Position numbers and translations under genes: made by a program. This document shows, piece by piece, positions 3,093 to 27,998 of a DNA stretch of 64,000 nt. The notes beneath the pieces were generated by a model. It searched no databases. It saw only the letters and a list, made by a program, of their open reading frames with translations, and had not been told where the DNA came from. The stretch is taken from IMG/VR virus record IMGVR_UViG_3300009430_000004, positions 124,001-188,000 of that record; one strand, written 5' to 3'. The first letter of the stretch is position 1, and the number at the start of each line of letters is the position of its first letter.

Positions 3093-4301
3093 ATGAGTAA
3101 GTTACCTGATAAGGAGAAAGCTTATCTATTAAGCTTGAAACCTGAAGATATAACATTTGATTTATTAGTGGACTTATTTGCAGATACTGCAAAGGTTGTT
3201 GATGGAAAAGCAAAGACTATTCCTAGCAGGATTAAAACTCATGACGAGTTTGATTTAAATCCTGGTGAGTATTTCAACAAAGAAAAGGTTCATACAAATG
3301 CTGGTCTTTTCATATATAATAAACTTATTGTGGAAAGAAGATTATCTGGAGTGTTAGGCTATGTCAATACTCCACTAAATAAGGGAGCCGTTGAAAAAAT
3401 AGAGGATAAACTATCAAATGCATTACTTAATGATGAAATTACAGTTAATGATATGGTTGAATATCTGGACAGAACTCAATGGTTAGCAATGCAATTTCAT
3501 GCTGTTGTGAGTGGTTCATTCACGATGAATACCTTAAAACCAAATACTAAGGTAGTTAATGAAAGAAAGCGTTTATTAAAAGAAAACCGAGAAAAACTCC
3601 AGAATGGAGATGTTGATGCTGCGGTTAAGATTGAAAAACAATTATTGGCTGTTGCAGATAAGGAGCTTGCTGGTGACCCAGGTCTAGATTTATACAAGTC
3701 TGGGGCAAGAGGTTCATTCGGTAATAACTTTAAGAATATTAGTGTTATGAAAGGTCCCGTATTTAATCCAGTAACAGGTCAATTCGATATAGTTGAATCT
3801 AATTTTATGGAAGGTATCAATAAGGAAGAGCTTCCTATTTACGGCAATGCTATCATTACTGGAGCATATCCTAAAGCAATCGGTACTGCCGTTTCAGGAT
3901 ATTTCAGTAAACAGATTATAGCAGCTCTTCAAGCCGTTGTACTTGATAAAATAGGTTCAGATTGTGGTACTAAGGGGTATCAGAAAATAACAATACATCC
4001 AGGTTCAGAGAAAGATTTCTTATATCGTTTCGTCATAGAGGGAAGTAAGTTAGTTGAATTAACTGACAAGAATATTTCTAGCTATGTCGGTAAGGAAGTT
4101 AAGATGAGGTCACCTATGTATTGCATCGGCAAGAAGTTATGTAGAGCATGTGCTGGACGAATGTATGAAAAACTTGAAATTGATAATATTGGACTTACAG
4201 CAGCAAGAGTTTCCTCAACGCTGCTGAACTTATCAATGAAAAAGTTCCATGACTCCAGTGCAAAAATAACTCAAATAAAGATTAATGATTTAGTGTTATA
4301 A
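3093..4301 (+). CDS. rpoC: Split multisubunit RNA polymerase beta' subunit, C-terminal part (probably virion RNAP)
   Basis: SGARGS, SNFMEG, TAVSGY (bridge helix), DCGT, RSPMYC..LCRACAG zinc site, IGLTAA...LSMKKFH (trigger loop). Confidence 0.9.
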   Translation: MSKLPDKEKAYLLSLKPEDITFDLLVDLFADTAKVVDGKAKTIPSRIKTHDEFDLNPGEYFNKEKVHTNAGLFIYNKLIVERRLSGVLGYVNTPLNKGAVEKIEDKLSNALLNDEITVNDMVEYLDRTQWLAMQFHAVVSGSFTMNTLKPNTKVVNERKRLLKENREKLQNGDVDAAVKIEKQLLAVADKELAGDPGLDLYKSGARGSFGNNFKNISVMKGPVFNPVTGQFDIVESNFMEGINKEELPIYGNAIITGAYPKAIGTAVSGYFSKQIIAALQAVVLDKIGSDCGTKGYQKITIHPGSEKDFLYRFVIEGSKLVELTDKNISSYVGKEVKMRSPMYCIGKKLCRACAGRMYEKLEIDNIGLTAARVSSTLLNLSMKKFHDSSAKITQIKINDLVL

Positions 4302-4615: not shown

Positions 4616-6028
4616 ATGAAGCGAAACAATGTTCGACTCATCAAATTAAATTGGAATGAGGAGTGTGAAAAAGATTTTATTATAGGTAAGGGTTTTGAAA
4701 TAACCCAACCCGCATTTAAGGGTGAAGAAAAATGTATGTATGGAACCCACTCCCCCCTATATGCAACTGACTGGGAAGATGAAGATGCTTTCTCTGAAAG
4801 ATATTCCTGTCAGTGTAAAAATCTTAGGGGTAGGGTGTATGAGGACGAGATATGTCCTGTATGTAATACAAAGGTTAGATTTAGAGATGTTGATTTAAAG
4901 ATGTTTGGATGGATAAAACTGTACAATCAGAATGTAATTCATCCAATATTTTATAAGATGATTAAATCGGTAATTGGAGATAAGCAATTTACTGAGATTA
5001 TAGAATTCGATAAAGACATGACCAAGAACGGAATAATTATAAATAAGAAAAGTAAGAATCCGTTTAAAGGTATAGGTCTTATCGAGTTTGAAGAAAGATT
5101 CGATGAGATTATGGCTTATTTCAGAGAGAAGAAAAAGAATAAGATTGACATTATAGATGAAATAATGAATGAAAGAGAAAAGGTATTCACATCATGTATA
5201 CCTGTTTACTCAGCAGTATTAAGACCTGTTTCATTCAGAGGTGAAACTTACTTCTATAATTCTATAGATAAGAAGTATAACTCAATCTTTTCATTGTCTC
5301 GTTTACTGAATAATACAGGTCCAGTATCCAGTAAAAAGAAGGTTAAGAAGAAAAAGATGGATGAACCTACAATACTACAAACACTTCAAAAGAAGTTGAT
5401 AGAACTGTGGGAATTAATATTCATGCAGATAAACCAGAAGGATGGTCATATAAAAGACCAAATACTAGGTGGAAGAATAAACTTCTCTGCAAGAAATGTT
5501 ATCATACCTGATCCTGACCTTAGAGCCGATGAAATTAGATTGTGTTACTTATCTTTCCTTGAATTATTCAAGTATCAAGTAATATCTCATCTAGTTAAGA
5601 TGAATGACATAACAGAAAACGAAGCTTATGAGCAGTGGTACAAAGCCACTATTATATATAACCCGAAGATATATGAATTAATGATGCACTTGGTTAAGAA
5701 GAGAAAACCTAAAGTGCTTATAAACAGAAACCCGACAATCAACTACGGGTCAATGTTATTGATGAAAGTTGTTGATATCAAGAATGAATATAAAGAAGAT
5801 TATACAATGAGTCTACCAATACAAATACTTGGTGTACTTAATGCAGACTTCGATGGAGACATTCTCAATATTATAGCAATGATGACCAAGAAAACTGCTA
5901 AGGCATTTGATAAGATATTCAATCCTAGAAAGAATATGTTTATTTCTAGAAATGATGGATTATTTAATGATGACTTTAATCTATTCAAAGACCAGTTAAC
6001 AGGTTTGAGGGAATTCAATTGTATCTAA
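4616..6028 (+). CDS. rpoC: Split RNA polymerase beta' subunit, N-terminal/catalytic part (probably non-virion RNAP)
   Basis: Zinc finger CQC...CPVC, LGGRINFSARNVI, INRNPTI and the catalytic NADFDGD motif. Confidence 0.93.
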   Translation: MKRNNVRLIKLNWNEECEKDFIIGKGFEITQPAFKGEEKCMYGTHSPLYATDWEDEDAFSERYSCQCKNLRGRVYEDEICPVCNTKVRFRDVDLKMFGWIKLYNQNVIHPIFYKMIKSVIGDKQFTEIIEFDKDMTKNGIIINKKSKNPFKGIGLIEFEERFDEIMAYFREKKKNKIDIIDEIMNEREKVFTSCIPVYSAVLRPVSFRGETYFYNSIDKKYNSIFSLSRLLNNTGPVSSKKKVKKKKMDEPTILQTLQKKLIELWELIFMQINQKDGHIKDQILGGRINFSARNVIIPDPDLRADEIRLCYLSFLELFKYQVISHLVKMNDITENEAYEQWYKATIIYNPKIYELMMHLVKKRKPKVLINRNPTINYGSMLLMKVVDIKNEYKEDYTMSLPIQILGVLNADFDGDILNIIAMMTKKTAKAFDKIFNPRKNMFISRNDGLFNDDFNLFKDQLTGLREFNCI

Positions 6029-8768: not shown

Positions 8769-10022
8769 GTGAGAGATATGAATTACGCAATGGCGTCAAC
8801 ATCGTTAGCTCATACGTATGGAAATATAACTGCATTTATGACTGAGTTCGTAAAAGGGTTATTCCCTAAGAATTATTTCAAAACAGTCCACATAAGTTCT
8901 TCTATTGCTTATAGGCAGTTTAACGTTTTCCAAAATACTAATAAAGAGTTTATAAAGAAAAATAAGCCTATGCTTATAATACGACCAAGAATAGATATAA
9001 GTGATAATGATACATTCCTAAATAATACTTTCCTTACAACAAGGATAGATGATACTGTAACGGATTTGGATTTTAGTAATCTTCAACCGTTTATAGAAGA
9101 CAAAGAAAAGGGTGTATTCATACGATATCTTTTAAACAGATTGAAGATGAGTTTTGACATCACTATTATCACAGAAACACAGATGGAGCAAATCAACCAG
9201 GCACATTTTATAAAGAATAGAATTAGACAGGATAGACCTTTTTTCTTGTCAACATCTCTCGAAAGTTATGTGCCTAAGGAGTTCATGCAAATGCTCTCCA
9301 AGAATATAAATGTACCAATGTACGATGAAAATAATAACATAAAACCATTCTTGGATTATGTAAACGGTACATCGGTATATCCAATAACGTATAAGATGAA
9401 AAACTCTTCAGGTAATGATGAGTTCTTTAGATTTTATCCAGCTAATTTGGATACAATTTTAACTGGTTTATCAACAGACGATGGGTCTAAAAAAGGTTTT
9501 GTTTCTGACGCATTCGCTGTTAATTTCAGTTTAACTACGGAATTTTATACCGCTGGTTTATATTATTATTTGACCACCAACAAGAAGATAATAGAGGATG
9601 TTGAAATTTCAATTTTGAATGATGATACAAGTATTATTCCTGTATTTACTGTAAGTAATATCTATGATGTGAATTTACCTCATGGGTGGAATATGTACAC
9701 AGCTCCAATGTATAAAGTAGAGGTTGATAAAGTACCTGACACAATGAATATAAGTTCTTTATTCAACCAAAGCCTAGTAAAGACTATAGCTTATCATCTT
9801 GAAAAGGGGATACCTCTATCAACCTTCATTCACACCACTGTGATGAAGGACAATACAATTTTAGACCCCACTAAAGGGGAGTATAAAATAGACTTCGAAA
9901 AAATGGAATTAATTACTTATAACACAAATAAAGTATCCACATATAGACTAATAATTCATGTGAATACTTTGTATATCAATAATTTATTGGTTGATATCTT
10001 GAGACTAGACGAAGAGAGGTGA
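8769..10022 (+). CDS. Putative virion structural protein
   Basis: 417 aa; late promoter AACATTTAATTAA at 8737-8749; no enzyme motif. Confidence 0.45.
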   Translation: MRDMNYAMASTSLAHTYGNITAFMTEFVKGLFPKNYFKTVHISSSIAYRQFNVFQNTNKEFIKKNKPMLIIRPRIDISDNDTFLNNTFLTTRIDDTVTDLDFSNLQPFIEDKEKGVFIRYLLNRLKMSFDITIITETQMEQINQAHFIKNRIRQDRPFFLSTSLESYVPKEFMQMLSKNINVPMYDENNNIKPFLDYVNGTSVYPITYKMKNSSGNDEFFRFYPANLDTILTGLSTDDGSKKGFVSDAFAVNFSLTTEFYTAGLYYYLTTNKKIIEDVEISILNDDTSIIPVFTVSNIYDVNLPHGWNMYTAPMYKVEVDKVPDTMNISSLFNQSLVKTIAYHLEKGIPLSTFIHTTVMKDNTILDPTKGEYKIDFEKMELITYNTNKVSTYRLIIHVNTLYINNLLVDILRLDEER

Positions 10023-10029
10023 TAACCTC

Positions 10030-10581
10030 ATGGAGGGATTCAGGATTAAAATTATGGGCAATCAAAATATATACACTAATGAGGTAAATAACTTTTATTT
10101 ACCAAGGTACACCACCGTAGTACCTATAAATAGTGCTACTGCCGATATGGCAGAAAAAATACAATTTTTAGGGTTCACCATTGAAGATTTCGATGATGAA
10201 CAAATGAGAGTAACACTTCCATATCATTGGACTCACTTTGAGGTGAGTGATGAGCAGGAAGTAATAGTTGATGTGTTAGGTAGAATACGGGTTGTTATTG
10301 ATCCACATCGAAATAAAATGGAATTACTGCGAAGATTTGGATATGCAATTAATCATGTCAATATACCTGATAAAAAGGTATCTGGAATGCAGTGTTTCAT
10401 AACCGATATGAATAAGCCTGTGACTCAAATAGATATAAACCCACAACAATATCAACAATATTTAGATGAAGCTGGAGGCTCTGTTGACAATCTATTGAAT
10501 ATTTGCATAACTCAATGTCAAAATATACTAGATAAAGAGTTTCCAGACTGGAGAAATGAATTAGCTTATTGGAATGAATAA
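10030..10581 (+). CDS. Hypothetical protein
   Basis: 183 aa; GAGGTG RBS; terminator hairpin at about 10577-10613. Confidence 0.7.
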   Translation: MEGFRIKIMGNQNIYTNEVNNFYLPRYTTVVPINSATADMAEKIQFLGFTIEDFDDEQMRVTLPYHWTHFEVSDEQEVIVDVLGRIRVVIDPHRNKMELLRRFGYAINHVNIPDKKVSGMQCFITDMNKPVTQIDINPQQYQQYLDEAGGSVDNLLNICITQCQNILDKEFPDWRNELAYWNE

Positions 10582-10618
10582 TTAGATGGCATCCCAGCCA
10601 TCTAATTATTTTTATATT

Positions 10619-10628
10619 TATATATTAT
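10619..10628 (+). promoter_or_regulatory. Early-class promoter TATATATTAT
   Basis: Exact 10-mer upstream of ppk1. Confidence 0.65.
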
Positions 10629-10673
10629 TACAACAGATAAAAATACAGCGTACGTTATAAGGAGGGTAAAAAA

Positions 10674-12833
10674 ATGTCACATAGTGTTGCTATAACAGAT
10701 GTTTATAGAAGAGAGCTTTCAGAGTTTAATTCTAAATTCAACGACCCAAAGTTTTATATAAATAGAGAGTTAAGTTGGATAGAGTTTAACAAGAGAGTTT
10801 TACACCAAGCACTAAGAAAAGATATTCCTCTATTGGAAAGATTAAAGTTTCTAGGTATAACTAATTCAAATCTTGATGAATTCATAATGGTGAGATTTTC
10901 ATCTGTAATGAATAGAGTTATCAATGATTCTGAGGATGAAGATATATCAGGACTTAAACCCATAGATGAGTATCAGGAATTATTGGACCAAATCATGGAA
11001 TTTAAAAGTGTTCAAGCAGACTGTTATGATAGATTATCTAAAAAGTTAATTAAGACTAATATAATAATTAGTCAATATCAACAACTGAGCAAGAAGGAAA
11101 AGGAGCATGCAGAGAAGCTATTCTATAAAAATATCTTCCCATTACTAACTCCTATCACCTATGACACGACTAAAGATTTTCCATTGATAAGGTCTAAGCA
11201 ACTTAATATAGTTGTAGCATTAGAAGACAGAAAAAATGCTAATCTAAATGTAATCTCGATAATTCCCATTGATAGTGGATTGGATAGATTATATAAGATT
11301 GAAACCGACAATAAAGACGAGGATATTAAGTATATTTTATTAGAAGAGATAATTCATGCGTTCCTAAATAAGATATTCGTTAATAAGAATATCATATATA
11401 GTGGATGTATGAGAATTCTAAGGGAGGCTAATATTGAATTAGAACACAATAAAGACGTCTATATAATAGATAGGATGAAGCAAACCCTTATTCAAAGAGA
11501 GTTTAGTCGTCCGATATTCATGGATGTTCATGAGTCAATTCCTAGACATGTCCTAAAGATATTGACTAAGATATTTGATGTTGATAAGAAGCATGTCTTC
11601 AAATCAAAAGGTTTAGTAGACCCATCATTCTTAGCATCAATGCCTATAAAGAGCCATGCTTTGGAATACGAACACTTTGAACCACAATACCCTCAAGAGT
11701 TAATAGGTGAACATGATATGTTTACAGCCATAGATACAAATGACATAATCCTACATCATCCATATGAAAGCTTTGGACCTGTTATAAAATTCCTGGAACA
11801 TGCTGCTCAAGATGATAGTGTTTTAGTAATAAAACAAACTCTTTATAGAGTATCATCATATGAGTCACCAATAGTTGAAGCTTTATGTAAAGCTGCACAG
11901 AATGGTAAACAGGTTAGTGTTCTATTAGAGATTAAGGCTAGATTTGATGAAGATAGGAATATGTCCCTGATTGAGAAATTGAAATTATCTGGTTGTAAAA
12001 TAATCTATGGAGTTGAAGAGTTAAAAACTCACTGTAAGTTAATTCTTGTGGTTAGAAAAACAAGTAAAGGATTAAAGACATATTGTCATATAGGAACTGG
12101 TAATTATAATGATAAGACAGCAAAGATTTATACAGACTTATCTTATTTCACTTCAAATAATAAGATAGGTGAAGACCTGTTGTCAATATTTAATATATTA
12201 TCAGGATTTTCAGAACCTGCGAGTGAAGGAAACAAAATATTCTTCTCTCCATTCAATCTTAGAAGCAAATTATATACTCTGATTGATAGAGAGATAGAAA
12301 ATGCACGAAAGGGAAAGAAAGCATTTATAACTCTTAAATTAAATTCTCTATCTGATAAAGGAATGATACGGAAATTATACCAAGCTGCTTCATTCGGTGT
12401 TAAGATAACAATATTCTGTCGAGGAGTTTGTTCAATGAAACCTATCAATAAGAATATAACAATTAAAAGTCTTATAGGTAGATACCTTGAGCATAGTAGA
12501 ATATATTACTTTTACAATAATGATAAGTCTGAGATTTATATATCAAGTGCAGACTTGTTAACAAGAAACTTGGACAGAAGAGTAGAACTCTTAGTACCAT
12601 TAACAGATAGTGAAGTTAGGACAAAATTATTTGGCATTATAAGTGCTTATTTCAAAGACACTTGTAATACCTATATCATGAATTATAAGGGAGAGTATCA
12701 GCTATTAGCCAAGGAAGAATGTTTTAATCTGCATGAGTTCTTTATGGATGAAGCTATTAATAACTATAAGCTGAGAAATATTCCCAAGATAACATTTAAA
12801 AATAAAAAGAAATATGGGGATAGCAATGTTTAA
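10674..12833 (+). CDS. ppk1: Polyphosphate kinase 1
   Basis: NRELSWIEFNKRVL, SNLDEFIMVR, LHHPYESF, IKQTLYR, EIKARFDE, KTHCK (phospho-His motif), HIGTGNYN, GRYLEHSRIY, SSADLLTRNLDRRVE; full length. Confidence 0.96.
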   Translation: MSHSVAITDVYRRELSEFNSKFNDPKFYINRELSWIEFNKRVLHQALRKDIPLLERLKFLGITNSNLDEFIMVRFSSVMNRVINDSEDEDISGLKPIDEYQELLDQIMEFKSVQADCYDRLSKKLIKTNIIISQYQQLSKKEKEHAEKLFYKNIFPLLTPITYDTTKDFPLIRSKQLNIVVALEDRKNANLNVISIIPIDSGLDRLYKIETDNKDEDIKYILLEEIIHAFLNKIFVNKNIIYSGCMRILREANIELEHNKDVYIIDRMKQTLIQREFSRPIFMDVHESIPRHVLKILTKIFDVDKKHVFKSKGLVDPSFLASMPIKSHALEYEHFEPQYPQELIGEHDMFTAIDTNDIILHHPYESFGPVIKFLEHAAQDDSVLVIKQTLYRVSSYESPIVEALCKAAQNGKQVSVLLEIKARFDEDRNMSLIEKLKLSGCKIIYGVEELKTHCKLILVVRKTSKGLKTYCHIGTGNYNDKTAKIYTDLSYFTSNNKIGEDLLSIFNILSGFSEPASEGNKIFFSPFNLRSKLYTLIDREIENARKGKKAFITLKLNSLSDKGMIRKLYQAASFGVKITIFCRGVCSMKPINKNITIKSLIGRYLEHSRIYYFYNNDKSEIYISSADLLTRNLDRRVELLVPLTDSEVRTKLFGIISAYFKDTCNTYIMNYKGEYQLLAKEECFNLHEFFMDEAINNYKLRNIPKITFKNKKKYGDSNV

Positions 12834-13161
12834 AAAGATTCAATTATTACTACTGAAATTTAAACTGAGAATGTATGAGAGTGAAGCTAAATGGTATGAG
12901 GAGAGAGGTTGTTATGATGACTGGTATCATGAACATGGAATACCGAATCTAAAAAGGGATATTAAGGAGCTTGAAATAACTATCAAGAATCCTCAGCAAA
13001 GGACATTTTGTTATTGCCCTAATGAAGAATGTAATAATGAATTAATTAGTAGTGATAGTTTTGTAAGTGACGATGAGGTCGTCACTTACATATGCACAAA
13101 ATGTGGCACTGTATCTAAATGGTATTTTGATGCACCGTGTCCAATACTAATAAAGGAATAA
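12826..13161 (+). CDS. Small zinc-ribbon protein
   Basis: CPNEEC...CTKCG; likely start ATG 12826 overlapping the ppk1 stop region. Confidence 0.6.
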   Translation: MFKKIQLLLLKFKLRMYESEAKWYEERGCYDDWYHEHGIPNLKRDIKELEITIKNPQQRTFCYCPNEECNNELISSDSFVSDDEVVTYICTKCGTVSKWYFDAPCPILIKE

Positions 13162-13164
13162 AAA

Positions 13165-13199
13165 GATGAGATGTGTATATTACACATCTCATTTTTTTT
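13165..13199. terminator. Bidirectional terminator between convergent genes
   Basis: ATGAGATGTGTA-TAT-TACACATCTCAT flanked by A and T tracts. Confidence 0.75.
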
Positions 13200-13599
13200 C
13201 CTCTTTGTCGTCTTTTTTCTCAGTAGGGGAATCTTGGTCTGAAATACTCGAAAAATCTATCTTAATACCCTTTTTGATTTTTATAGCAGTCTCAACGAGC
13301 TTGATACACTTTGCTAACGTTGTAACATTTCCAAATAATTCAAATCCAAGTATACCGCTTATGAAAGCAAAGAATATTATTGTACTTACGTTTAATTTTG
13401 ATAACCACGTCGACTCCAAAAATATGAAGAGGAACGCAGTCCAGATTGCCCCTATTAACATTCTACATAGTCTCATCCTAGGTTCCTTATTGGTCATAGT
13501 GTCATATAGGTCCTTTATAAATGCACCAAAGAAACCGATCATGAAGTAGAATAACAGATTAATAGCAATTGTCATTAAATCTGCATAATTTAATTGCAT
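13189..13599 (-). CDS. Small 3-TM membrane protein, holin-like
   Basis: Three hydrophobic segments and a highly charged C-tail (EKKDDKEEKK); last gene of the late virion block. Confidence 0.5.
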   Translation of the reverse strand: MQLNYADLMTIAINLLFYFMIGFFGAFIKDLYDTMTNKEPRMRLCRMLIGAIWTAFLFIFLESTWLSKLNVSTIIFFAFISGILGFELFGNVTTLAKCIKLVETAIKIKKGIKIDFSSISDQDSPTEKKDDKEEKK

Positions 13600-13730
13600 A
13601 TTACTCAGAACCCCTTCCCTTTAAGAAAAAACCTATTATTCTTTGTATTAACACAAGAGGGTAAAAAGTTTTTCCTAAAAAAGTGTTATTTCTAATCATT
13701 TATACAAACCACAGTAAAAAGATATCCTTG

Positions 13731-14717
13731 TTAATCCTTTTTATTTTGCAAAATATATAAGTCATAAAGCTTATTATAAATAAATATCAGAGCGATTATT
13801 GCCAGTAGCATCAGAGCACTCATTGTCACAACTGTTATGTCCTTTATTAAAAGTCTTGTAGTGTAGTATCTGATAATTTCTGATTTTCGCTCATCTAGAT
13901 ATTTAAAATTATTGATATGTGATTTCTTTATTTGGTCATATAAATTAAAACCCTGGGTAATGATAATTTTATCATTCTCATTCTTTATACCACCAGATCC
14001 TATATCAGGTATACCAAATATGTCACCTCTACGTGTTATATATGAAGGAGTAAGAAATTCATAGGTTTTCAATCCTTCTATTCCCTCACTGTCAAACACC
14101 TCTTTTAATGCATCTAGTGTCATACTCGTTATCATTTTATGTTTAGGATTTTCCGACGGTAAGAATTCCCAGAAAATTATCTTATCTGACATTATAAGTA
14201 TTTCATCTACAGCAGCTTTAGCTAGTTTTTTATTAGCATGCATGTCATATTCAATATCCCAGGTTCTCTTATCACCAAACTTACTACAATTAGGTGAGAA
14301 ATCACCATTTATACCCCACGGCAAAGCAGCCCATGGGTCATTATTGTCATTTTCTATACCATTTAAATACACCCCTGTAAAATTAGCCCTGATTATTTCA
14401 GAGAATTTAGTATTCGGTATATTATTATCCAACTCATATTTGAGTTTATCCAAATCAGGATATGCCTGACGGAGTTGTTTTTCGATGTTAGTGGCTAATT
14501 CTTTACTCTGCATTAAAGATTTCTGACGATTTTCTTCAATAAGAGTAGTAACTAATTTCCACTCCATTTCTCGAACAACTTCAAGCCGTCTTTGACGATC
14601 CATCATCTCACTATTAACATCCACCTTATACAAATAGAAATTTGTTGATAGAAGTATCAACAAAATTAGAATTGTTGGCAGAATCGCATTAACGATTTTC
14701 TTCATCATATTACTCAT
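13731..14717 (-). CDS. Membrane protein with two TM helices flanking a large extracytoplasmic domain
   Basis: AAGGGAGG RBS before ATG 14717 (MSNMMKK...); N- and C-terminal TM segments; late promoter at 14777-14789. Confidence 0.65.
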   Translation of the reverse strand: MSNMMKKIVNAILPTILILLILLSTNFYLYKVDVNSEMMDRQRRLEVVREMEWKLVTTLIEENRQKSLMQSKELATNIEKQLRQAYPDLDKLKYELDNNIPNTKFSEIIRANFTGVYLNGIENDNNDPWAALPWGINGDFSPNCSKFGDKRTWDIEYDMHANKKLAKAAVDEILIMSDKIIFWEFLPSENPKHKMITSMTLDALKEVFDSEGIEGLKTYEFLTPSYITRRGDIFGIPDIGSGGIKNENDKIIITQGFNLYDQIKKSHINNFKYLDERKSEIIRYYTTRLLIKDITVVTMSALMLLAIIALIFIYNKLYDLYILQNKKD

Positions 14718-19865: not shown

Positions 19866-20192
19866 TTATAAGCCGAATACGACTTCATTAATAATCATCT
19901 GGGTATCACGCAATTGTTCTTCCAGCATCTTTATTCTTTGGTCTGAAGAATAATATGGTACGTAATTAGGATTGCGGAAGAATCCTTCGCTCTTTGTATA
20001 ACAATATTCGTGAGGAACAACACCTTCTGGAATTAGACTAACTTCAATGGCTTCTAGCCTTTCCTGAGGATCAACTACAAACCTTTTTGTATCTTGATTA
20101 TTCTTATCTACCAAAAGACCATGTTGTACTCTTTCTACTGTTATAGCAGTAGCCATAAATTCTTTTGTTGCCTTATCAACCACAATAAGCAT
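19866..20192 (-). CDS. Putative tail-fibre assembly/chaperone protein
   Basis: 'PEGVVPHEYCY...FFRNPNY' followed by a coiled coil; lies between the RBP and xkdX. Confidence 0.55.
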   Translation of the reverse strand: MLIVVDKATKEFMATAITVERVQHGLLVDKNNQDTKRFVVDPQERLEAIEVSLIPEGVVPHEYCYTKSEGFFRNPNYVPYYSSDQRIKMLEEQLRDTQMIINEVVFGL

Positions 20193-20232
20193 ATTATTAC
20201 CTCCAATCTAATTTTATTACTAATCTGTTCTA

Positions 20233-22188
20233 CTAATAAGTTGACAATTTATCTATCATGGCAACGTTAGGATTTATATATGGAGTATACTTTACTATGC
20301 CGTTTCCTACGATGGAACCAATTGGTTTTCGAGATCCATCATTTGCTGCGGATAGATTACCTGCTCCACCATCCCCACCGTTCCTATATACAGCACCTAC
20401 ACCAGATGTTACTGAATTAGGGGCTTTCATAGCTCCCGATAGTAGTATTTTACTTGATGAAATTGCAACACCTATAACTCTAGGTAGTTTTACAGTGCAG
20501 AAATAGTTAGTAATTATATGTATACCTCGTGCTGAATCATATGTGGATGAGTAGTAGCTAAACACTAAGAAAGAACCATTAATTATAAAGTACCCTGCAT
20601 TACCACCACCGAAACCTCCCCATCCTGTTGTAGGCATAAACGCAACCCAATGGACAGCATTATTATCCCAATCGACTGAAAATAACGCCAAATAGGTCTT
20701 TGAGCTAACACTGACAACAAAGTAACTTCCACCTTCCCACATCTGTTGTATACGTTTCTTATTCTGTTGATAGTTTCTTGAATTATATGACCAGTTTGTA
20801 TAAAGTTCCCCTATGGTTTCCCATGATGATGCTGTTGGTGATGTATTACCAAATATTCTTGCTGTTACACCATCACCATAAACAACGACAGCCTTTGTAT
20901 CAGATACCTTAGCTGCACTTATATCTGGTGTTCCATCTGCAAATCTATAGTCAAACTTATATTGCAAATCAGTATTACCATTGGCATAGAAAAATGCTGC
21001 CTGACATATATTAGGTCCAGATTCGTCCCAGTTATAAGTTACACATAGACGCCCGCCACCTAGGTGGGTTATTGCACCGTTATAGTCCATATTCTTACCA
21101 GGCATCATGACGACGGTCATTCCATGGTAGAAATAAGTACCACTGGTATACATTAAGGACACCTTAAGACCATCACCACTACTACCCAGTATTGCAAATC
21201 TATTACTATCAATACCTTCAATATCCCTAATACTATATCCACTTCCCCCATCCAATGTAACCGCATTGTTTGACCATATGGTCATTATACCAGAATCTAC
21301 GTTAATAGCTATACGTGTGAAATTGTATGTTGGGTTCGAATCGTATGTTACTAAAACGACATAAGCCGTAGCATTCTTATAATTCCCATCAATTTTTGCA
21401 CACGCACAAAATGAACCTGCACTTATTGAATATACTGCTGGGTTACCATGAGGTTCCAAAGCCCCAGTTGTGGGGTGTATTCCCATTGTCTGAAGGTAAA
21501 AAGTTGAAAGGTTGTTATACGGGCATGTTATAACCAAAACCTTATCATCAGATATCTTTTCAACACACATTATCAGGTAATCAGGACCTAAATAGTTACT
21601 TGAAAATGTCTTTGCTATATAGCTACCTGCTGCATATGAGGTTATAGGAGCAAATACTGCTGGGTCACCTGGATTAGGCCCGCTAGCAACTACAGTAGCA
21701 AGTTTTCCAGGAACTAAATTTGTTGCGTTAGTTTCTAATATCACAGGTTCAGTTGAACTAAATGTTGTTCCATAAAAGAAGAAACTATTTGGACCTAGAG
21801 CAACTCCGATAGGATGCATATTCCCTATATGTGTGTATAAAGGATATGTCAATACTGATGTAGCTGTATAAGGATAATATTCTGCACCAGTAACAAGATT
21901 TGCCCACCCATAATACATTCCCTGAACACATACATCACATGCAACACCAGGACCTGCTGGTCCACCTATAGCTATTCCTATAGGAATTTCATCCATATTA
22001 TATACAAATGGAATTATTTTACCGTCTTCTCTAAGTGATACTAAATTACCTGGGTTTACAGTTGTTTCACCAACTAAAAATGTTTTTATTATTGATTGTG
22101 GTCTTTTATTGTACATTTTGGAGAGGGAGTCTCCACCGACTCCCCCTAACATTCCATGTGCACTTAAGACATTATTAATATTAGGCAT
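20233..22188 (-). CDS. Tail-associated receptor-binding protein (beta-propeller-like repeats)
   Basis: 651 aa; 'IGIA/IGVA' flanking modules and repeated 'KISDDKVLV/KVSDTKAVV' blades. Confidence 0.55.
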   Translation of the reverse strand: MPNINNVLSAHGMLGGVGGDSLSKMYNKRPQSIIKTFLVGETTVNPGNLVSLREDGKIIPFVYNMDEIPIGIAIGGPAGPGVACDVCVQGMYYGWANLVTGAEYYPYTATSVLTYPLYTHIGNMHPIGVALGPNSFFFYGTTFSSTEPVILETNATNLVPGKLATVVASGPNPGDPAVFAPITSYAAGSYIAKTFSSNYLGPDYLIMCVEKISDDKVLVITCPYNNLSTFYLQTMGIHPTTGALEPHGNPAVYSISAGSFCACAKIDGNYKNATAYVVLVTYDSNPTYNFTRIAINVDSGIMTIWSNNAVTLDGGSGYSIRDIEGIDSNRFAILGSSGDGLKVSLMYTSGTYFYHGMTVVMMPGKNMDYNGAITHLGGGRLCVTYNWDESGPNICQAAFFYANGNTDLQYKFDYRFADGTPDISAAKVSDTKAVVVYGDGVTARIFGNTSPTASSWETIGELYTNWSYNSRNYQQNKKRIQQMWEGGSYFVVSVSSKTYLALFSVDWDNNAVHWVAFMPTTGWGGFGGGNAGYFIINGSFLVFSYYSSTYDSARGIHIITNYFCTVKLPRVIGVAISSSKILLSGAMKAPNSVTSGVGAVYRNGGDGGAGNLSAANDGSRKPIGSIVGNGIVKYTPYINPNVAMIDKLSTY

Positions 22189-22189
22189 A

Positions 22190-24694
22190 CTATGACACCA
22201 CCTTACTTAATATATTTCCGTTACCATCATATGACATTGTCCATGTCTTAGTGAGTATAACGGTCACTCCATCAGCAGCAAAATACTGCCAAGTGTCAGT
22301 TGTATAGTTAGGACTCGCTCCACCCGATAGTGTACTCTTCATATATAGAGTACCATCGGCAGGTCTCTTGTATTCAACAACAGTTGCTACCCCATTTGAA
22401 TCATGATTACTCATATATTGATTGTAAAAATCTAATTCTTTAAAATTGTCTATATCAATTATTTTCTTCCACGGTCCCCAAACTCCACCAGCCATTGCCC
22501 TATACCAAGAATTTATACCGCTGAAATCTGTTAGATATTGTACAGCGTGAATTTCATTATGTCTTAATACAGTTAAATACTTCCAAGGATGCCCGTCATT
22601 TGGTACATTAGACATATTGTAGCCCATATAGAAACCTGTGGTTATTACATCATTGGCGTTCCCGTATGTTACATCGGTACATGTTCCTCCCAATCCATAC
22701 CCACTTGGAGCAAATGATGAAGCATGTTTACCATCTAGTAAGTCAGCATCCATTCCCGTTCCAGAACCTTGATATCCACCATTCCATATAACATTACCGT
22801 TAATCATAACAGCGGCATTGTAAACACCTGCACTATTAACTCCTGTCATAAAGTTAATTGTATCAGGAGAATCGTTACCAACATATATTCTTAATTCAGT
22901 AGCTTCAGCACCGTCCTTACTTATTAATTTAATACCAGCACAGTCTCCTCCACCACCAAATGCATCATTTGGGAATCCTATTCCGTTACCATCCCCAGCG
23001 GCGAGCCATAGTTTTCCTGACATTGAACCACCAGACAGATTTAATTTTGTACCAGGGTCAAAGTTACCAGTATGCCATAATTCATGCCACGCTCCCCATG
23101 AACCATTACTCTTTAGACGGAAAAACTTACGAGCACTACCTGAACCAACAAACTCTTGAACTAACCAGTTAGGATTGGTATCACCATTATATCTCCACAC
23201 CCATAAATGTCCCCATAACCCTCCAGGGACATTTGTTGTTACCGTTGGATTAACATGGTAAAATCCTGGGTATATTGCATCATTTAGGTCAGCAACCTGA
23301 CCACCCCCAGCATTGCTTCTATAATCCCCATCGTGTAAGAAATACTGTCTATTAGAACCTGCTAATTGTGAAATACCATGTACACCATCAAGAGTGTCAG
23401 CATCTAAACCCGAACCGTCCCCATCATTTCCAGAAGACCATACTTTTTCTGGAGTTAATGCAACTTCTTTGGATATATCAGCAGGTTTAGCAACGTCATC
23501 AATTGCAACAACCCTATTAACCCTAGTTCCTTCTGCACTTGTATCACAAGCAAATACAGAGAAACCTTGCCAATAATCTTGTCTTGGGAACCACATGCAT
23601 AGGTGGTTATTATAATTGAATAATCTTATCTCAGGTATATATCTACCAGTACATATACCACCAAAGTTGATGATGGTGTTATTATAGATATATCCCTGTA
23701 CTTTGATATTGAATGGTATACACCCACCATAGGAGTTACCAACAATTTCAAACAGGAAAGACGCACCTGCCCAGTCAGCAGACCATATATCGGTGCGGAT
23801 TAACGTACCATTTATGAAATCTCTTTTTGAGCTAATATATTCCAAATCGGAAGCATGTAATCCATCTAGTATATCAGCATCTAACCCAGAACCAGATCCA
23901 TCATTGCCTGCGTTCCATACAACAAATTGACCCTCATTAGCATAATATTCTCCATTAGTGATGAAATGTAATTTACTATCTTTTTCGTAGAATGCACACT
24001 CACCACCATTAGAACCTACACCTCCAAGATAATTCCACCCCTCAGCGGCACTCCTCGGTCTCCATGAACTACTACCATCGGGAAATTTATCATGGGTATC
24101 AAGTCTTCTCCACGATGACCAATTACTCCCACTTCTAAAAACTCTTGTCCATACCCCAACACCATCAAAGTCATATGCTGTTTGGGCTATCCAGTTATCG
24201 TCATGACGCATTACTAAATAGTGACAGTGATTGGCTGAACCAAGAGGGGGTCTATTAGGATTATTATGACCCCTATAAAATCCTGTAACTTTTAATGTAT
24301 TAAGGTCTTGCTGGTCAATCCATGTAGCAGCAGTACCCAATCCATAACCAGATGGGGCATAATTCGCAGGATTTAAATTACCAGCGTGCCACACCGTATT
24401 TCCATTTACTCTAATATTTGCATCAGTATCTATAAAACCATTTTCACTATGCCATATATTCTGCTGAGTGAATCCTGGTCTATGAAATGATAATGCTGCA
24501 ATATTAGAACCATTTGATTTTATTTCTAGTGTGCAATTATTCCACATAGGTGTTCCTTCAACACCATGTTGCACCGTTAGTTTTCCCATTGTATCGCCTG
24601 TTTTATTAACTTTGCCATCGAGGCTTTGATCTACATAATCGGTCGTAGCTATATATTTATTACCTACACGGCTACCACCTCTCATATCTGACAT
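22190..24694 (-). CDS. Tail fibre protein (pair 3)
   Basis: Three GxDADxLDG linkers, APSGYGLG motifs and knob repeats (DLN...TGFY...W..W). Confidence 0.85.
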   Translation of the reverse strand: MSDMRGGSRVGNKYIATTDYVDQSLDGKVNKTGDTMGKLTVQHGVEGTPMWNNCTLEIKSNGSNIAALSFHRPGFTQQNIWHSENGFIDTDANIRVNGNTVWHAGNLNPANYAPSGYGLGTAATWIDQQDLNTLKVTGFYRGHNNPNRPPLGSANHCHYLVMRHDDNWIAQTAYDFDGVGVWTRVFRSGSNWSSWRRLDTHDKFPDGSSSWRPRSAAEGWNYLGGVGSNGGECAFYEKDSKLHFITNGEYYANEGQFVVWNAGNDGSGSGLDADILDGLHASDLEYISSKRDFINGTLIRTDIWSADWAGASFLFEIVGNSYGGCIPFNIKVQGYIYNNTIINFGGICTGRYIPEIRLFNYNNHLCMWFPRQDYWQGFSVFACDTSAEGTRVNRVVAIDDVAKPADISKEVALTPEKVWSSGNDGDGSGLDADTLDGVHGISQLAGSNRQYFLHDGDYRSNAGGGQVADLNDAIYPGFYHVNPTVTTNVPGGLWGHLWVWRYNGDTNPNWLVQEFVGSGSARKFFRLKSNGSWGAWHELWHTGNFDPGTKLNLSGGSMSGKLWLAAGDGNGIGFPNDAFGGGGDCAGIKLISKDGAEATELRIYVGNDSPDTINFMTGVNSAGVYNAAVMINGNVIWNGGYQGSGTGMDADLLDGKHASSFAPSGYGLGGTCTDVTYGNANDVITTGFYMGYNMSNVPNDGHPWKYLTVLRHNEIHAVQYLTDFSGINSWYRAMAGGVWGPWKKIIDIDNFKELDFYNQYMSNHDSNGVATVVEYKRPADGTLYMKSTLSGGASPNYTTDTWQYFAADGVTVILTKTWTMSYDGNGNILSKVVS

Positions 24695-24707
24695 AATAAC
24701 CCCTCCC

Positions 24708-27700
24708 TTACAAATTCATTTTTTCTTTTATATTTCCATTAATTATTAGTTTGTCTTTTACTTCTTGCATTTGAGTTCTACACATTTTGTCAAACTCTGC
24801 ATCTGTAAGAGCATATTTGCAAACTATTAAATCCTGATAGAAGGTATAACATAAGCCTTCCAACCACCACCCACCTAACTTAAGGTCATGTCCCCAGTTG
24901 TTAACATAGTGATTTGCTGGTACTGTACCAAGAGTTTTAGAGGCAAAAGCCTTTTGCCCGTTCATGAAGTATGCATTGACTGTTATGGTTGACCCACTCT
25001 TTATAATTCCCATAATAACAGGTCTACCACTATAGTAATAATCTCTGTTTATGGCACCATTTGTAAACCCAAAGGTTCCCATTGTATTATCATGTGCTAC
25101 CATATGATCTCCATTGAATTCTTTACCCCAGTAGAAATATCCAGCACCCTCTCCACCTAGTGAATCTATATTGTATCCTGTATATGTGTAGTCGTGCCCA
25201 AACATAGGATATTTCTTATATACTATTGACCAATCACCATTCCAGTCTAGTCCTAAATCCCTGTGTAGATTATAATGCAGTTTACCATAACCCCTATCCC
25301 CTACAAAGAATGGTGGTTTAAATGGTAAATTTACAACCATAGGGAATGCTACAAAGATGTCAAATGATATATCAGTCCATGTGGACCATCCACCGATGTG
25401 AAGTGTATTACCCGCTGGTTGAGTAGCTATATCCCCAGTAACAATATATTCTTTCCATTGGGTTGTTAATTGCAGTTGTTGAATTATTGCCTGACCTGCA
25501 CTATTATTTCCGATTATAAGAGGAACACTACATGGTTTAGTAGCTTTCAACCATATCGAACAAGTGAATCTTCCAGGAAATAATCTATTTTGTCTACACC
25601 CAAAGTAACTATCTATACTGCTATGAGGGTGTACTCTAACAGCTTTTTTTCCACCAAATGGATCTATTTGATTAAATGTAAGAGTTACGTTTTCTTTAGC
25701 ATCCCAAGCACTAAAATCCAATGGTGTTGAAACATAATTTGTCATTGCTTTACCAACAAATGCTTTTCCTCCCTCAAATAATACATTACTACCATCTGGG
25801 TTATCAGCATCTTTGTGATAGTATTGATCTTTTAAATTATCTGATAATGGGAAATAATACGCATTTTTAGGTATATAAGCAAATTTCTCCATTATTTCAG
25901 TATTAAATATATTTCCCTCTGATGTAAGAGAGAATCTTCTTTGTGATAATTTATTTATCTCATCAGCAGACAATCCCCAATTATATATTGTAACATCTCT
26001 AAATATCGCATTGGCACAACTGAGGTAAGGTTCATAACCTCTGGCACCCAATGTCCAATAAGGAATTTGTGTTAATTTATCAGGTTGATAATAACCCTGA
26101 TTAGATCCCCATTTCACATTGTTTATATATACATCAACCTGAGATGTATTTTTATATACAAATGTAATTTGACAATCGTCTTGATAAGGTGGCATATCAG
26201 CACGAGCTATTTGACATATATGACCACAGTAATTATCCCCTATATATTTCCATAGTGAACCCATATAAATTATATTACGCTCACTACCCTCAGAAGCAAA
26301 TCTTCCACCTTTAGTTAGTAAATTTGCTCTAAATGATACTGAAAATGGGAATGTTTTGGGCCATGGAAGTCCAATTCCATTAAACCCAGACCAGCTTCCA
26401 CTACTCTTAGAGCCTCTAATGAATGCTGTGGAATATTCTCTTCCTTCTTCAAGCTGCATACATGTCCAGTCTATTATGATAGGTTCACCGACTTGAGCTG
26501 AAGGTGAAAAGAAGCTAGTGTAAATTGCATCGTATCTTTCAGCAGGGTCATCTCCCGTTCTATAACCACAGGTACGCTTCCATCCATCTCCAACATCTTC
26601 TGTATATAGATCATACCATCGTGCTATATTACTTGCATATACTGATACCACAACATCGTCTTTATTAAGACAACGCCAGTAAATACTAAACGCATAAGCA
26701 GTATTTGCTTTGAAAGTGTGTACAGAACTGTGTATTCCATGAGACCAACGTTCTGTTCTAAATCCATTAACTGAACTCTCTGTTGGAGTCATTGATACTC
26801 TGTAAATAGGTTGGTCCATATACTTTTCTTTTATGACTTCTATTGAAGCTGGCACACCATAGTTATTATAAACACTAATTCCAGCATCAAGATTGTAAAT
26901 ATTTGTTGTAGAATCATCTACAGCTATACCATTTTGAGTCAATCTATGGTTTGTAAATAGCTCAATATCATGACCTGTTGACGTTTCAGCATAAATTCCA
27001 TCAATAGCCGAATCAAATACTGGATACCAATCCCTTCCGTTATCACTAACCTCAGTTTTAGTATTATAATATGAACGCCCATCACCCCAATAATGGAATA
27101 TTTTTAATTTTCGTACGTCATACACAGTCAACATATCAACTGTAATATACTTTGGAGCCCCATCAGCAAGCAACTCGAAATATTTTGCACAGTCAGTAGT
27201 ACCATCTGTCATTGAGAATAAATGTTGTGTCAAATGTGCGACAGGGCTTGTTTCTATCATAGGCTTTCCTTTAGCAACATTATTGCCTCTGAAATCAAAT
27301 GCCTGTATTTGCACCCAGTGATTACCTCCATTTGCTGTACTACCGTTAATCCAGTCCCTTATATATCTTATCTTCTTAGGGCAATAATATAATGGTTTTA
27401 ACCCTTGTATTGAAACTGCTGTATCATCAAATGGGAAATGTATTATTCCCTTTGGGATTGTAGTTTTAAAGTATATCCCTGTATCAGCAGTTTCACCACT
27501 TCTATAATCTTCAAATATTGCACTACCAGTGCCTTTTTGGATTATACCAGCCCATGCAGAACGGTAATTCCAATTTAGATATCTAAATCCTAATTTCTTT
27601 AATACTGGATATAATTTAGCATTTCCACTACTAGATGGATCATCATATGTTGTAAATATCAAAGTGTATCCATCTGGTGTATTAGTTATAAAATCTGCTA

Positions 27701-27986: not shown

Positions 27987-27998
27987 TTTACATCACTC

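What the first reader, a model, noticed from the sequence alone, without database searches (positions are those of the whole stretch)
10619..13161. Phage-encoded, apparently intact polyphosphate kinase PPK1 under a phage early promoter
Seen: a 719-aa PPK1 with all hallmark motifs, phage-like AT-rich codon usage, a phage-type TATATATTAT promoter, and a coupled zinc-ribbon gene. It therefore looks domesticated rather than host contamination. Knowledge: PPK1 interconverts ATP and polyP, and polyP affects the stringent response, Lon proteolysis, sporulation and nucleoid condensates. PPK1 is not a commonly described phage auxiliary gene. Inference: the phage may tap host polyP for NTPs, buffer ATP against nucleotide-depleting defences, or use polyP to organise its replication compartment.
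Basis: partly seen in the sequence, partly recalled or inferred. Interest (0 to 1): 0.66.

Follow-up and report, generated by a model that had tools for sequence, protein, structure and literature searches.

The report
Jumbo-phage polyphosphate kinase, early gene
A complete 218-kb uncultured groundwater jumbo phage carries an intact, long-domesticated polyphosphate kinase (PPK1) gene behind an AR9-type early promoter, and the same gene is inherited across a large group of 200-275-kb phages, so polyphosphate probably matters to their infection cycle, though its role there is untested.

Summary
Window 10674-12833 (+) encodes a 719-aa, four-domain PPK1. It scores above the curated PPK1 equivalog cut-off, keeps all three catalytic histidines, and its model superposes on E. 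coli PPK over its full length.

It is not contamination. The window lies inside a complete 218,088-bp virus record, and an independent assembly spans the locus without a difference. The nearest bacterial PPK1s (Clostridia) are only 38-42% identical.

The TATATATTAT motif is real: 49 copies in the genome, 44 of them intergenic. It matches the experimentally defined AR9 virion-RNA-polymerase early promoter. The gene has no AR9-type late motif.

New here: PPK1 is not a one-off.
- Relatives at 46-72% identity sit in the same synteny on 190-270-kb phage contigs, with dN/dS about 0.12.
- 49 viral PPK1s are compatible with a single origin.
- A sister lineage lacks the gene.

The overlapping zinc-ribbon ORF is not conserved with PPK1. 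The phage has no PPX and no PPK2.

The physiological role is inference. My best guess is that it couples host polyP to ATP/NTP supply early in infection. No RNA data exist.

Virus-encoded ppk has already been reported in metagenome surveys, and it is annotated in two Vibrio phages. I class this as a new member of a known kind, of moderate interest.

The parts
8769..10022 (+). Conserved phage gene of unknown function (417 aa, phrog_21946). It is the syntenic anchor upstream of PPK1 and has an AR9-type late motif at -32.
   Evidence: A homologue is present in 10 of 10 divergent PPK1-bearing jumbo genomes.
10030..10581 (+). 183-aa ORF of unknown function, weakly conserved between the anchor gene and PPK1 in some relatives (L099, L103). 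It is not an HD-domain protein.
10576..10611 (+). Intrinsic-terminator-like hairpin plus T-run that closes the upstream (late) unit.
10619..10628 (+). Early-promoter core TATATATTAT (A at -3). The predicted start site, 6 nt downstream, is A10635/G10636.
   Evidence: Matches the AR9 early consensus AAATATATATTAT-(6N)-G+1 (PMC5312081). An exact copy lies upstream of PPK1 or its operon in 12 of 13 related loci.
10659..10666 (+). Shine-Dalgarno sequence AAGGAGGG, 7 nt before the ATG.
   Evidence: AGGAGG-type words are the most enriched upstream 8-mers in the genome.
10674..12833 (+). PPK1 coding sequence, 719 aa (P0001). Domains: N 10755-11069, middle 11097-11639, C1 11715-12215, C2 12243-12713. 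The codon for the phospho-histidine H453 is at 12030-12032.
12826..13161 (+). Small Cys-rich (zinc-ribbon-like) ORF, P0002. The longest reading starts at 12814. The start at 12826 has a GGGGA Shine-Dalgarno sequence and overlaps the PPK1 stop codon by 8 nt. It is an accessory gene, not conserved alongside PPK1.
   Evidence: (phrog_4005).
13160..13198 (.). Strong, bidirectional terminator-like hairpin (18 bp) that closes the PPK1-P0002 unit and the convergent minus-strand genes.

Best explanation
Shown: this is a genuine, functional-looking polyphosphate kinase 1 gene that belongs to the phage. The phage is an uncultured 218-kb jumbo phage from groundwater. It carries two sets of multisubunit RNA-polymerase genes and both AR9-type promoter classes. 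PPK1 and a small accessory ORF form a two-gene unit bracketed by terminators. The unit has an early (virion-RNAP-type) promoter and no late-type motif, the same motif that precedes genes for replication proteins and a non-virion RNAP subunit. The gene most probably entered the phage lineage once, long ago, from a Bacillota/Clostridia-like donor. It has since been inherited vertically under purifying selection across a large group of 200-275-kb phages.

From established knowledge of the family: the enzyme transfers the ATP gamma-phosphate via phospho-His453 onto a growing polyP chain. The reaction is reversible, so polyP + ADP gives ATP. E. coli PPK1 also phosphorylates other NDPs from polyP.

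Inferred: the phage makes extra PPK1 early in infection to couple the host's polyphosphate store to the ATP/NTP pool. This would buffer energy and nucleotide-bound phosphate while several host-genome equivalents of phage DNA are replicated. The net direction in vivo (use or synthesis of polyP) is not established.
For: Identity and intactness.

The gene belongs to the phage:
- The window is G000:124001-188000 of a 218,088-bp record with terminal repeats, 100% complete by CheckV.
- The flanks carry RNAP subunits, tail fibres, an endolysin, gyrase and a helicase.
- An independent Logan contig of 41.5 kb spans 9000-14000 with 0 differences at even depth.

AR9-like transcription scheme:
- Two beta-type matches and two beta'-type regions, the second beta' match weak at E 0.006.
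- Early-motif statistics and the published AR9 consensus.
- The late motif AACA-N6-T[AG] lies upstream of 75 of 223 ORFs against 22.9+-4.2 in shuffles. It occurs upstream of structural genes but not of PPK1.
- Other early-motif genes include a Cas4-like nuclease, gyrA and nvRNAP beta'.

Vertical inheritance:
- Conserved synteny in all 11 testable IMG/VR loci whose anchor gene is >=50% identical, and in L008.
- dN/dS of 0.12.
- The 30-row phage clade has SH-aLRT 100 and a stem of 0.93; the 44-row viral clade has SH-aLRT 99.
- Holding all 49 viral rows together is not rejected: p-AU 0.68, lnL +9.3.
- 10 of 10 divergent PPK1 genomes hold the anchor-gene homologue.
- In about 240 protein clusters no contig exceeds 276 kb, whereas the bacterial loci lie on contigs of up to 6.4 Mb.

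No PPX and no PPK2 in the genome, so phosphotransfer rather than Pi release is the activity the phage supplies.

Against: - There is no expression data: no RNA run holds the phage.
- The +1 position of the promoter is A, where the AR9 consensus has G; G follows at +2. In AR9 some near-consensus sites are silent.
- The direction of the reaction in vivo is unknown. At a high ATP/ADP ratio PPK1 makes polyP.
- The host is unknown. If it is a Clostridium-like bacterium it probably has its own PPK1, so the benefit of a second copy is not obvious.
- A sister lineage of similar genome size does without the gene.
- Bacterial sampling in the trees is limited to the 80 best hits plus one Acinetobacter sequence, so the single-origin inference could weaken with wider sampling.
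- Twenty positions are fixed differently in the phage clade, for example R->F282 and Q->H687. Altered kinetics or specificity cannot be excluded.
Confidence: 0.7

Rival explanations
1. The phage PPK1 works mainly in the synthetic direction. Early in infection it converts ATP into polyP to remodel the host. Known effects of polyP include stimulating Lon to degrade ribosomal proteins, compacting the nucleoid, acting as a chaperone or stress signal, interfering with sporulation, and banking imported phosphate for later DNA synthesis.
For: Early-promoter class. No PPX in the genome that would destroy the product. PolyP activates Lon degradation of ribosomal proteins and is required for lytic growth of P1 and fd (statements in PMC2435150). 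The enzyme keeps the full synthetic machinery.
Against: Spending ATP on polyP at the start of a 218-kb replication programme is costly. No phage gene that would read out or bind polyP was identified near PPK1, and its neighbours are unknowns that vary between relatives. The sequence gives no evidence on direction.
Confidence: 0.3
2. PPK1 is a counter-defence gene. It buffers ATP/NTP from polyP against host systems that deplete nucleotides during abortive infection.
For: Expression from an early-type promoter, before defences act. The reaction is reversible. The gene is retained across a very diverse phage group.
Against: There is no link to any defence or anti-defence locus, and no PADLOC-type context was seen near it. 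Position and sequence are conserved and stable, with dN/dS 0.12, unlike the usual fast-turnover anti-defence islands. This remains purely speculative.
Confidence: 0.08
3. The gene is bacterial DNA in the contig (a chimeric assembly or recent host capture) or a decaying remnant without function.
For: PPK1 is a typical cellular gene. Several 'phage' database records with PPK are really bacterial contigs: Acinetobacter phage MD-2021a has fur and pqq neighbours, and MT835512 falls inside Lachnospiraceae.
Against: The gene sits at 134.7-136.8 kb, in the interior of a complete 218-kb genome. An independent 41.5-kb contig is identical across it. Composition is phage-like. A phage promoter, Shine-Dalgarno sequence and terminators flank it. 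The nearest bacterial PPK1 is 38-42% identical. Synteny holds in more than 12 related phage contigs. All catalytic residues are kept and dN/dS is 0.12.
Confidence: 0.02
4. PolyP made by the phage enzyme serves as a physical scaffold or condensate that organises the phage replication or assembly compartment, or balances charge for packaged DNA.
For: The gene is tied to jumbo phages with very large genomes. No chimallin-type nucleus is expected in AR9-like phages (PMC13282480), so another way of organising the compartment is conceivable.
Against: No evidence from this analysis bears on it. PolyP is a polyanion like DNA and would not neutralise it. No polyP-binding partner is conserved next to PPK1.
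Confidence: 0.04

Closest known systems
Bacterial polyphosphate kinase 1 (E. coli PPK, PDB 1XDO/1XDP; NCBIfam TIGR03705; EC 2.7.4.1)
   Same: Same four-domain architecture, same catalytic histidines and arginines, and full-length structural superposition. 128 positions are conserved in common with Clostridial PPK1s.
   Different: It is encoded by a virus and driven by a phage virion-RNAP-type promoter. It is only 28-29% identical to solved structures and 38-42% to the nearest bacteria. Twenty positions are fixed differently in the phage clade, and the termini (1-20 and 699-719) are short, poorly modelled and lysine-rich at the C-terminus.
Virus-encoded ppk1/ppk2 reported as phosphorus-cycling auxiliary metabolic genes in metagenomes (PMC13188868, which cites Li et al. 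2025 Water Res 268:122678; PMC12106651)
   Same: A PPK gene on viral contigs, flanked by viral genes and interpreted as an AMG.
   Different: Those reports are catalogue-level surveys. Here the gene is placed in a complete jumbo-phage genome, assigned to a promoter class, and shown to be an old, syntenic, selected gene of a whole phage group rather than a sporadic capture.
PPK of cultured Vibrio phages vB_VcorM_GR7B / GR11A (GenBank MT366760, MT366761)
   Same: An annotated polyphosphate kinase inside a phage genome of about 200 kb, among hypothetical phage genes.
   Different: Only 32-33% identical. It branches apart from the clade studied here, near the proteobacterial outgroup, so it is most likely an independent acquisition.
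Early (virion RNA polymerase) promoters of Bacillus phage AR9: AAATATATATTAT-(6N)-G+1 (Lavysh et al. 2017, PMC5312081)
   Same: The 10-nt core is identical. G lies 6 nt downstream in 65% of the 49 copies. The sites are intergenic and point at early-type genes. The AR9 late motif AACA-N6-TA/G is also enriched in this genome.
   Different: The phage is only distantly related to AR9 (nvRNAP beta' 31% identical). The positions just 5' of the core prefer A-(A/T)-T rather than AAA. About 15 sites carry an extra upstream CGTA element. At the PPK1 site the +1 base is A. No transcript mapping exists.

Membership tests
PPK1 (TIGR03705, EC 2.7.4.1) | Four domains in order: N, middle (head), C1, C2 (the last two PLD-like) | tested here: met
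   Pfam PF13089, PF02503, PF17941 and PF13090 all match end to end. The model matches 1xdo_A over 691 columns with TM 0.82/0.85.
PPK1 (TIGR03705, EC 2.7.4.1) | Score above the curated equivalog cut-off | tested here: met
   TIGR03705 scores 727.1 bits against a cut-off of 465.85. NF003921 scores 755.8 against 701.
PPK1 (TIGR03705, EC 2.7.4.1) | Autophosphorylated histidine (E. coli H435) plus H454 and H592 | tested here: met
   H453, H472 and H607 align to them (that these E. coli residues are the essential ones is from my own knowledge of the literature). They are invariant in 15 phage sequences and shared with 80 bacterial sequences.
PPK1 (TIGR03705, EC 2.7.4.1) | Nucleotide/phosphate-binding arginines (E. 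coli R375, R564) | tested here: met
   R392 and R583 align and are invariant. Other binding residues that I recall only from memory were not mapped. One conserved bacterial Q is H687 in the phage clade, and its role was not checked.
PPK1 (TIGR03705, EC 2.7.4.1) | Catalyses reversible ATP-polyP phosphotransfer | not testable with these tools
   Needs an enzyme assay.
AR9-type virion-RNAP early promoter | Consensus AAATATATATTAT-(6N)-G+1 | tested here: inconclusive
   The 10-nt core is exact at 10619-10628, with A at -3. The base 6 nt downstream is A, and G follows one base later. For AR9, one early promoter deviating at the start point is active, and one near-consensus site is silent.
AR9-type virion-RNAP early promoter | Motif over-represented, intergenic, and oriented towards genes | tested here: met
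   14 copies in the window against 2.2+-1.6 in shuffles. 44 of the 49 genomic copies are intergenic, and most lie 20-110 nt from a start codon.
AR9-type virion-RNAP early promoter | Phage encodes two multisubunit RNAP sets | tested here: met
   Two Rpb2_6-type matches over cut-off. Two Rpb1_2-type regions, the second weak (E 0.006, below cut-off). phrog_2962 and phrog_2987 subunits lie in the window.
AR9-type virion-RNAP early promoter | Transcript starts there early in infection, independently of protein synthesis | not testable with these tools
   No RNA run holds the phage.
Viral auxiliary metabolic gene | Metabolic gene of cellular origin inside a bona fide viral genome, flanked by viral genes | tested here: met
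Zinc-ribbon protein (for P0002) | Two Cys knuckles, and a match to a zinc-ribbon family above threshold | tested here: inconclusive
   The sequence shows C66-x-C68-x4-C73 and C94-x2-C97. The Pfam hits (IBR, zf-like, Zn_Ribbon_TF) have E values of 0.02-0.15, all below cut-off. It matches phrog_4005, of unknown function, at E 5.8e-15.

The most novel reading that the evidence does not exclude
PPK1 is an ancient, near-core early gene of a very large, globally distributed and so far uncultured group of 200-275-kb jumbo phages with multisubunit RNA polymerases, found in groundwater, compost, gut and rumen. In these phages polyphosphate metabolism would be an integral, phage-controlled part of the infection programme, with a role beyond generic phosphate scavenging. 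Examples would be a polyP-driven NTP supply for the phage's own RNA polymerases and replication, or a specific polyP-dependent step such as the one reported for P1 and fd.
Probability: 0.3. Interest if true: 0.72.

Novelty: new member of a known kind. Interest (0 to 1): 0.5.

Why it matters
Jumbo phages must build several host-genome equivalents of DNA per burst, and polyphosphate is the main cellular reserve of both phosphate and phosphoanhydride energy. A phage lineage has kept its own PPK1 through deep divergence: PPK1 is 52% identical where the phage RNAP subunit is only 39.5%. It places the gene in the early class. This suggests that control of the polyP/ATP balance is selected during infection.

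The result gives a concrete, cloneable enzyme and a large natural sequence series for testing what polyP does in phage infection. That question has been open since host PPK1 was reported as essential for P1 and fd lytic growth.

It also has a practical consequence. Many of these 200-250-kb phage genomes are binned as bacterial MAG contigs (Herbinix, Ruminococcus, Muribaculaceae, Brevinematia labels). This could inflate estimates of bacterial polyP-accumulating potential in metagenomes.

Tried and rejected
- **Contamination or chimera:** rejected.
- **Near-identical DNA in the phage collection:** none found by megablast. By protein search the best hits are below 40% identity. Most are unverified faecal contigs or bacterial contigs filed as phage.
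- **Upstream 183-aa ORF as an HD phosphohydrolase partner** (suggested by the HD-PPK operon in L008): no similarity and no Pfam hit.
- **Other polyP genes in the genome:** no Ppx-GppA and no PPK2. The one HD protein lies far away, at genome 16.2 kb.
- **Zinc-ribbon ORF as a conserved partner:** absent near PPK1 in 20 related loci and anywhere in 4 related genomes. For that reason I did not run complex prediction.
- **tRNAs as a host clue:** none in the window. The host remains unassigned. Hints only: an Amidase_3 + PG_binding_1 endolysin, the nearest bacterial PPK1s are Clostridia, and some relatives are binned with Clostridia MAGs.
- **Sigma-70-type promoter scan:** not above chance, 38 found against 32+-6.
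- **Big representative-protein search:** not used, because the word search answered the question.
- **Li, Rao & Kornberg 2007** could not be read. It is cited only through PMC2435150.
- **Li et al. 2025 Water Res** is not held and is cited only through PMC13188868.
Full report
**1. What is there**

The window is positions 124001-188000 of a 218,088-bp IMG/VR virus record with terminal repeats, rated 100% complete by CheckV. The genome has 33.5% GC and a 31-bp exact end overlap. A simple ORF call gives about 223 ORFs covering 92% of the sequence.

ORF 10674..12833 (+) is open and encodes 719 aa.
- Pfam finds the four PPK1 domains in order and end to end.
- The NCBIfam equivalog TIGR03705 scores 727 bits against a cut-off of 466.
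- The best solved relatives are PPK1 structures, at E about 1e-101.
- In the HMMER alignment to E. coli PPK (1xdo), H453, H472 and H607 correspond to H435 (the phospho-histidine), H454 and H592. R392 and R583 correspond to R375 and R564.
- These residues are invariant in 15 phage homologues. They are among 128 positions shared at >=90% conservation with 80 Clostridial PPK1s.
- An AlphaFold model (pLDDT 80.8, pTM 0.81) superposes on 1xdo_A over 691 columns with TM 0.82/0.85.

The protein is an intact PPK1 by every test available here.

**2. It is the phage's own gene**

The flanks are typical of a jumbo phage:
- split multisubunit-RNAP subunits at 3093-4301 and 4616-6028;
- virion proteins, and a 20-kb block of tail-fibre genes;
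- an Amidase_3 endolysin, a Cas4-like nuclease, a DnaB-like helicase, and gyrase B and A.

The genome holds two beta-type RNAP matches and two beta'-type regions, the second of them weak. This is the virion plus non-virion arrangement of phiKZ/AR9-like phages. The nearest cultured relatives by nvRNAP beta' are phiR1-37, Bacillus phage BpSp, Staphylococcus jumbo phages and AR9/PBS1, at only 31-34% identity. No record of these phages appears among the PPK1 hits.

PPK1 has GC 30.6% and GC3 26.0%, within about one standard deviation of the genome's genes.

The sample is a groundwater metagenome. An independent Logan contig of 41.5 kb covers window 9000-14000 with no difference at even depth, so there is no assembly junction.

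The nearest PPK1s in one genome per species of 185,579 prokaryote species are Clostridia, mostly Lachnospiraceae, at 38-42% identity.

**3. The promoter**

TATATATTAT at 10619-10628 is one of 14 copies in the window, against 2.2+-1.6 in shuffles, and one of 49 in the genome. Of those 49, 44 lie in the 8% of the genome that is intergenic. Nearly all point at a start codon 20-110 nt away, and a G lies 6 nt downstream in 65%.

This matches the experimentally mapped early promoter of phage AR9, AAATATATATTAT-(6N)-G+1, which is read by the injected virion RNAP (Lavysh et al. 2017, PMC5312081).

The AR9 late motif AACA-N6-T[A/G] is also enriched here. It lies upstream of 75 of 223 ORFs against 22.9+-4.2 in shuffles. 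It sits in front of tail, virion and endolysin genes and of the upstream neighbour 8769-10022, but not in front of PPK1.

Other genes behind the early motif in the window include nvRNAP beta', a Cas4-like nuclease and gyrA.

The unit itself is compact:
- terminator hairpin at 10576-10611;
- promoter core;
- Shine-Dalgarno sequence AAGGAGGG;
- PPK1;
- the small overlapping ORF P0002;
- a strong bidirectional hairpin at 13160-13198.

One caveat applies. At the PPK1 site the base at the consensus +1 position is A, with G one base later. No transcript data exist.

**4. The zinc-ribbon ORF**

P0002 has Cys knuckles and matches phrog_4005 of unknown function. All its Pfam zinc-finger hits are below threshold.

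Its likely start is ATG 12826, which has a GGGGA Shine-Dalgarno sequence and overlaps the PPK1 stop by 8 nt, so translational coupling is plausible.

It has no counterpart next to PPK1 in 20 related loci, nor anywhere in four related PPK1-bearing genomes. It is an accessory gene of this genome, not a conserved partner.

**5. PPK1 is a lineage trait**

The word-based protein search returned about 120 clusters at 46-72% identity. Twenty-one of them lie on contigs of 157-272 kb and none on a longer contig.

In IMG/VR, every locus whose conserved upstream gene (phrog_21946 family) is >=50% identical to the window's carries PPK1 100-2,600 nt downstream. That is 11 of 11 testable loci. In a twelfth, the gene sits at the other end of a circularly permuted contig.

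A contig deposited as a Herbinix MAG (213 kb) has the same synteny. There PPK1 is 52% identical, while the anchor gene is 44% and RNAP beta' 39.5%. In a further related phage PPK1 sits in a different neighbourhood.

An exact early motif lies upstream of PPK1 or its operon in 12 of 13 such loci.

Closely related pairs give dN/dS of 0.12.

In a tree with 42 bacterial sequences, the 30 phage sequences form one clade with SH-aLRT 100 and a stem of 0.93 substitutions per site, among Bacillota.

A profile scan of IMG/VR found 48 PPK1 loci, most on contigs of 180-275 kb.
- 44 viral rows form one clade (SH-aLRT 99) apart from 34 bacterial rows.
- Forcing all 49 viral rows together is not rejected and in fact gives a better likelihood (p-AU 0.68).
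- Ten of ten divergent PPK1-bearing genomes (215-275 kb, >=90% complete) contain a homologue of the phage-specific anchor gene, so they belong to the same broad phage group.
- The most divergent branch (L159 type) has its own large set of relatives, again capped at about 250 kb. One is labelled Caudoviricetes in nr and others are binned as Ruminococcus or Muribaculaceae MAGs.

A sister lineage has an anchor gene 42-43% identical and lacks PPK1 altogether: 0 of 5 genomes, three of them >=90% complete.

Vibrio phage GR7B carries a PPK that branches elsewhere, which indicates an independent capture.

Limits: bacterial sampling is restricted to the best 80 hits plus one outgroup, the trees are quick LG+G4 searches, and several phage branches are long.

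**6. How it most likely works**

At the enzyme level, from established knowledge of PPK1, the ATP gamma-phosphate passes via phospho-His453 to the polyP chain end. The reaction is reversible, and E. coli PPK1 can also phosphorylate other NDPs from polyP.

The phage brings no exopolyphosphatase and no PPK2. What it adds to the cell is therefore phosphotransfer between polyP and nucleotides, not release of Pi.

The gene is in the early promoter class and is tied to phages with very large genomes. My leading inference is therefore that it couples the host polyP reserve to the ATP/NTP pool while phage transcription and replication ramp up. The opposite net direction, polyP synthesis to manipulate the host, is a serious rival. 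Counter-defence and scaffold ideas are not excluded but have no support here.

A reported requirement of host polyP for lytic growth of P1 and fd shows that polyP can matter to phages (cited in PMC2435150; the original could not be read).

**7. Comparison with what is known, and novelty**

Virus-encoded ppk1/ppk2 are already listed among phosphorus-cycling AMGs in metagenome studies, with a dedicated 2025 paper cited there. Two cultured Vibrio phages have an annotated PPK. The kind is therefore known.

I did not find, in the searchable library, any link between PPK and jumbo phages. Two jumbo-phage reviews do not mention polyphosphate.

The added value here is the promoter class, the evidence for an old single acquisition, the strong conservation across a large uncultured jumbo-phage group, and the PPK1-negative sister lineage.

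I rate it a new member of a known kind, of moderate interest (0.5). If PPK1 proves to have an integral role in these phages, the interest would be higher.

Noticed in passing
L002, L004/L094, L005/L097, L096, L098, L099, L102, L008 (homologues of window 4616-6028): The nvRNAP beta' gene is uninterrupted in the window. In many relatives it is split into 2-4 pieces separated by 0.3-1.4 kb, which suggests introns, inteins or homing-endonuclease insertions. A second gene, the homologue of genome 200721-202430, is split in the same way in L009.
   Followed up: no
whole genome; e.g. window 7849, 49124-49133(-), 59690-59699(-), 60339-60348(-), 63248-63257(-): About 15 of the 49 early motifs carry an extra conserved element containing CGTA roughly 20 nt upstream of TATATATTAT (for example AAACCGTAAAC, TTTCCGTATTTT). 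The PPK1 site lacks it. This may mark a subclass of early promoters.
   Followed up: no
whole genome; window e.g. upstream of 8769, 16830(-), 33736-37521(-), 38538-39692(-), 40286-41254(-): The AR9-type late motif AACA-N6-T[A/G] lies within 100 nt upstream of 75 of 223 ORFs, against 23+-4 in shuffles, mostly structural and lysis genes. In AR9 this motif is read on a deoxyuridine-containing template strand, so this phage might also have dU-DNA. This was not tested.
   Followed up: partly
window 20000-40000: The minus-strand block of very large tail-fibre and virion genes has 36-39% GC, against 31-33% in the rest of the window.
   Followed up: no
L008:8706-11530: In the phage contig binned as Herbinix, an HD-domain gene (208 aa) and PPK1 form one unit behind an early motif. 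This is a possible functional pairing that the window's phage lacks at this site; the window's phage has one HD protein at genome 16155-16460.
   Followed up: partly
L090 (Vibrio phage vB_VcorM_GR7B, MT366760): The independently acquired PPK of this cultured phage lies 3 kb from a DHH-family phosphoesterase. From my own knowledge, that family includes exopolyphosphatases.
   Followed up: no
window 10764-12302 (reads tool, runs X1 and X2): Both groundwater runs also hold a second, diverged PPK-like contig (4-8 kb, depth about 8) that matches only short conserved patches. It is probably a related phage in the same aquifer.
   Followed up: no
P0001 residues 100, 267, 278, 282, 395, 490, 587, 630, 665, 687 and others: Twenty positions are fixed (>=90%) to one residue in 30 phage PPK1s and to a different residue in 80 Clostridial PPK1s, for example R->F282, E->R267, C->S587, Q->H687. 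Whether any of them lines the active site or an oligomer interface was not checked.
   Followed up: no
window 13166-13599: Two overlapping ORFs on opposite strands (+127 aa, -136 aa) lie just after the bidirectional terminator. The + ORF starts inside the hairpin, yet residues 36-127 have a 41%-identical match right after PPK1 in L007/L104. Which strand codes is unresolved.
   Followed up: no
public records: GCA_028691795.1 contig JAQUYQ010000001.1 (L008); clusters P0019, P0207, P0224: Whole jumbo-phage genomes or fragments that carry PPK1 are deposited as contigs of bacterial MAGs (Herbinix, Brevinematia, Muribaculaceae, Ruminococcus flavefaciens). Conversely, the 'Acinetobacter phage MD-2021a' records are bacterial contigs with fur and pqq genes.
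   Followed up: partly
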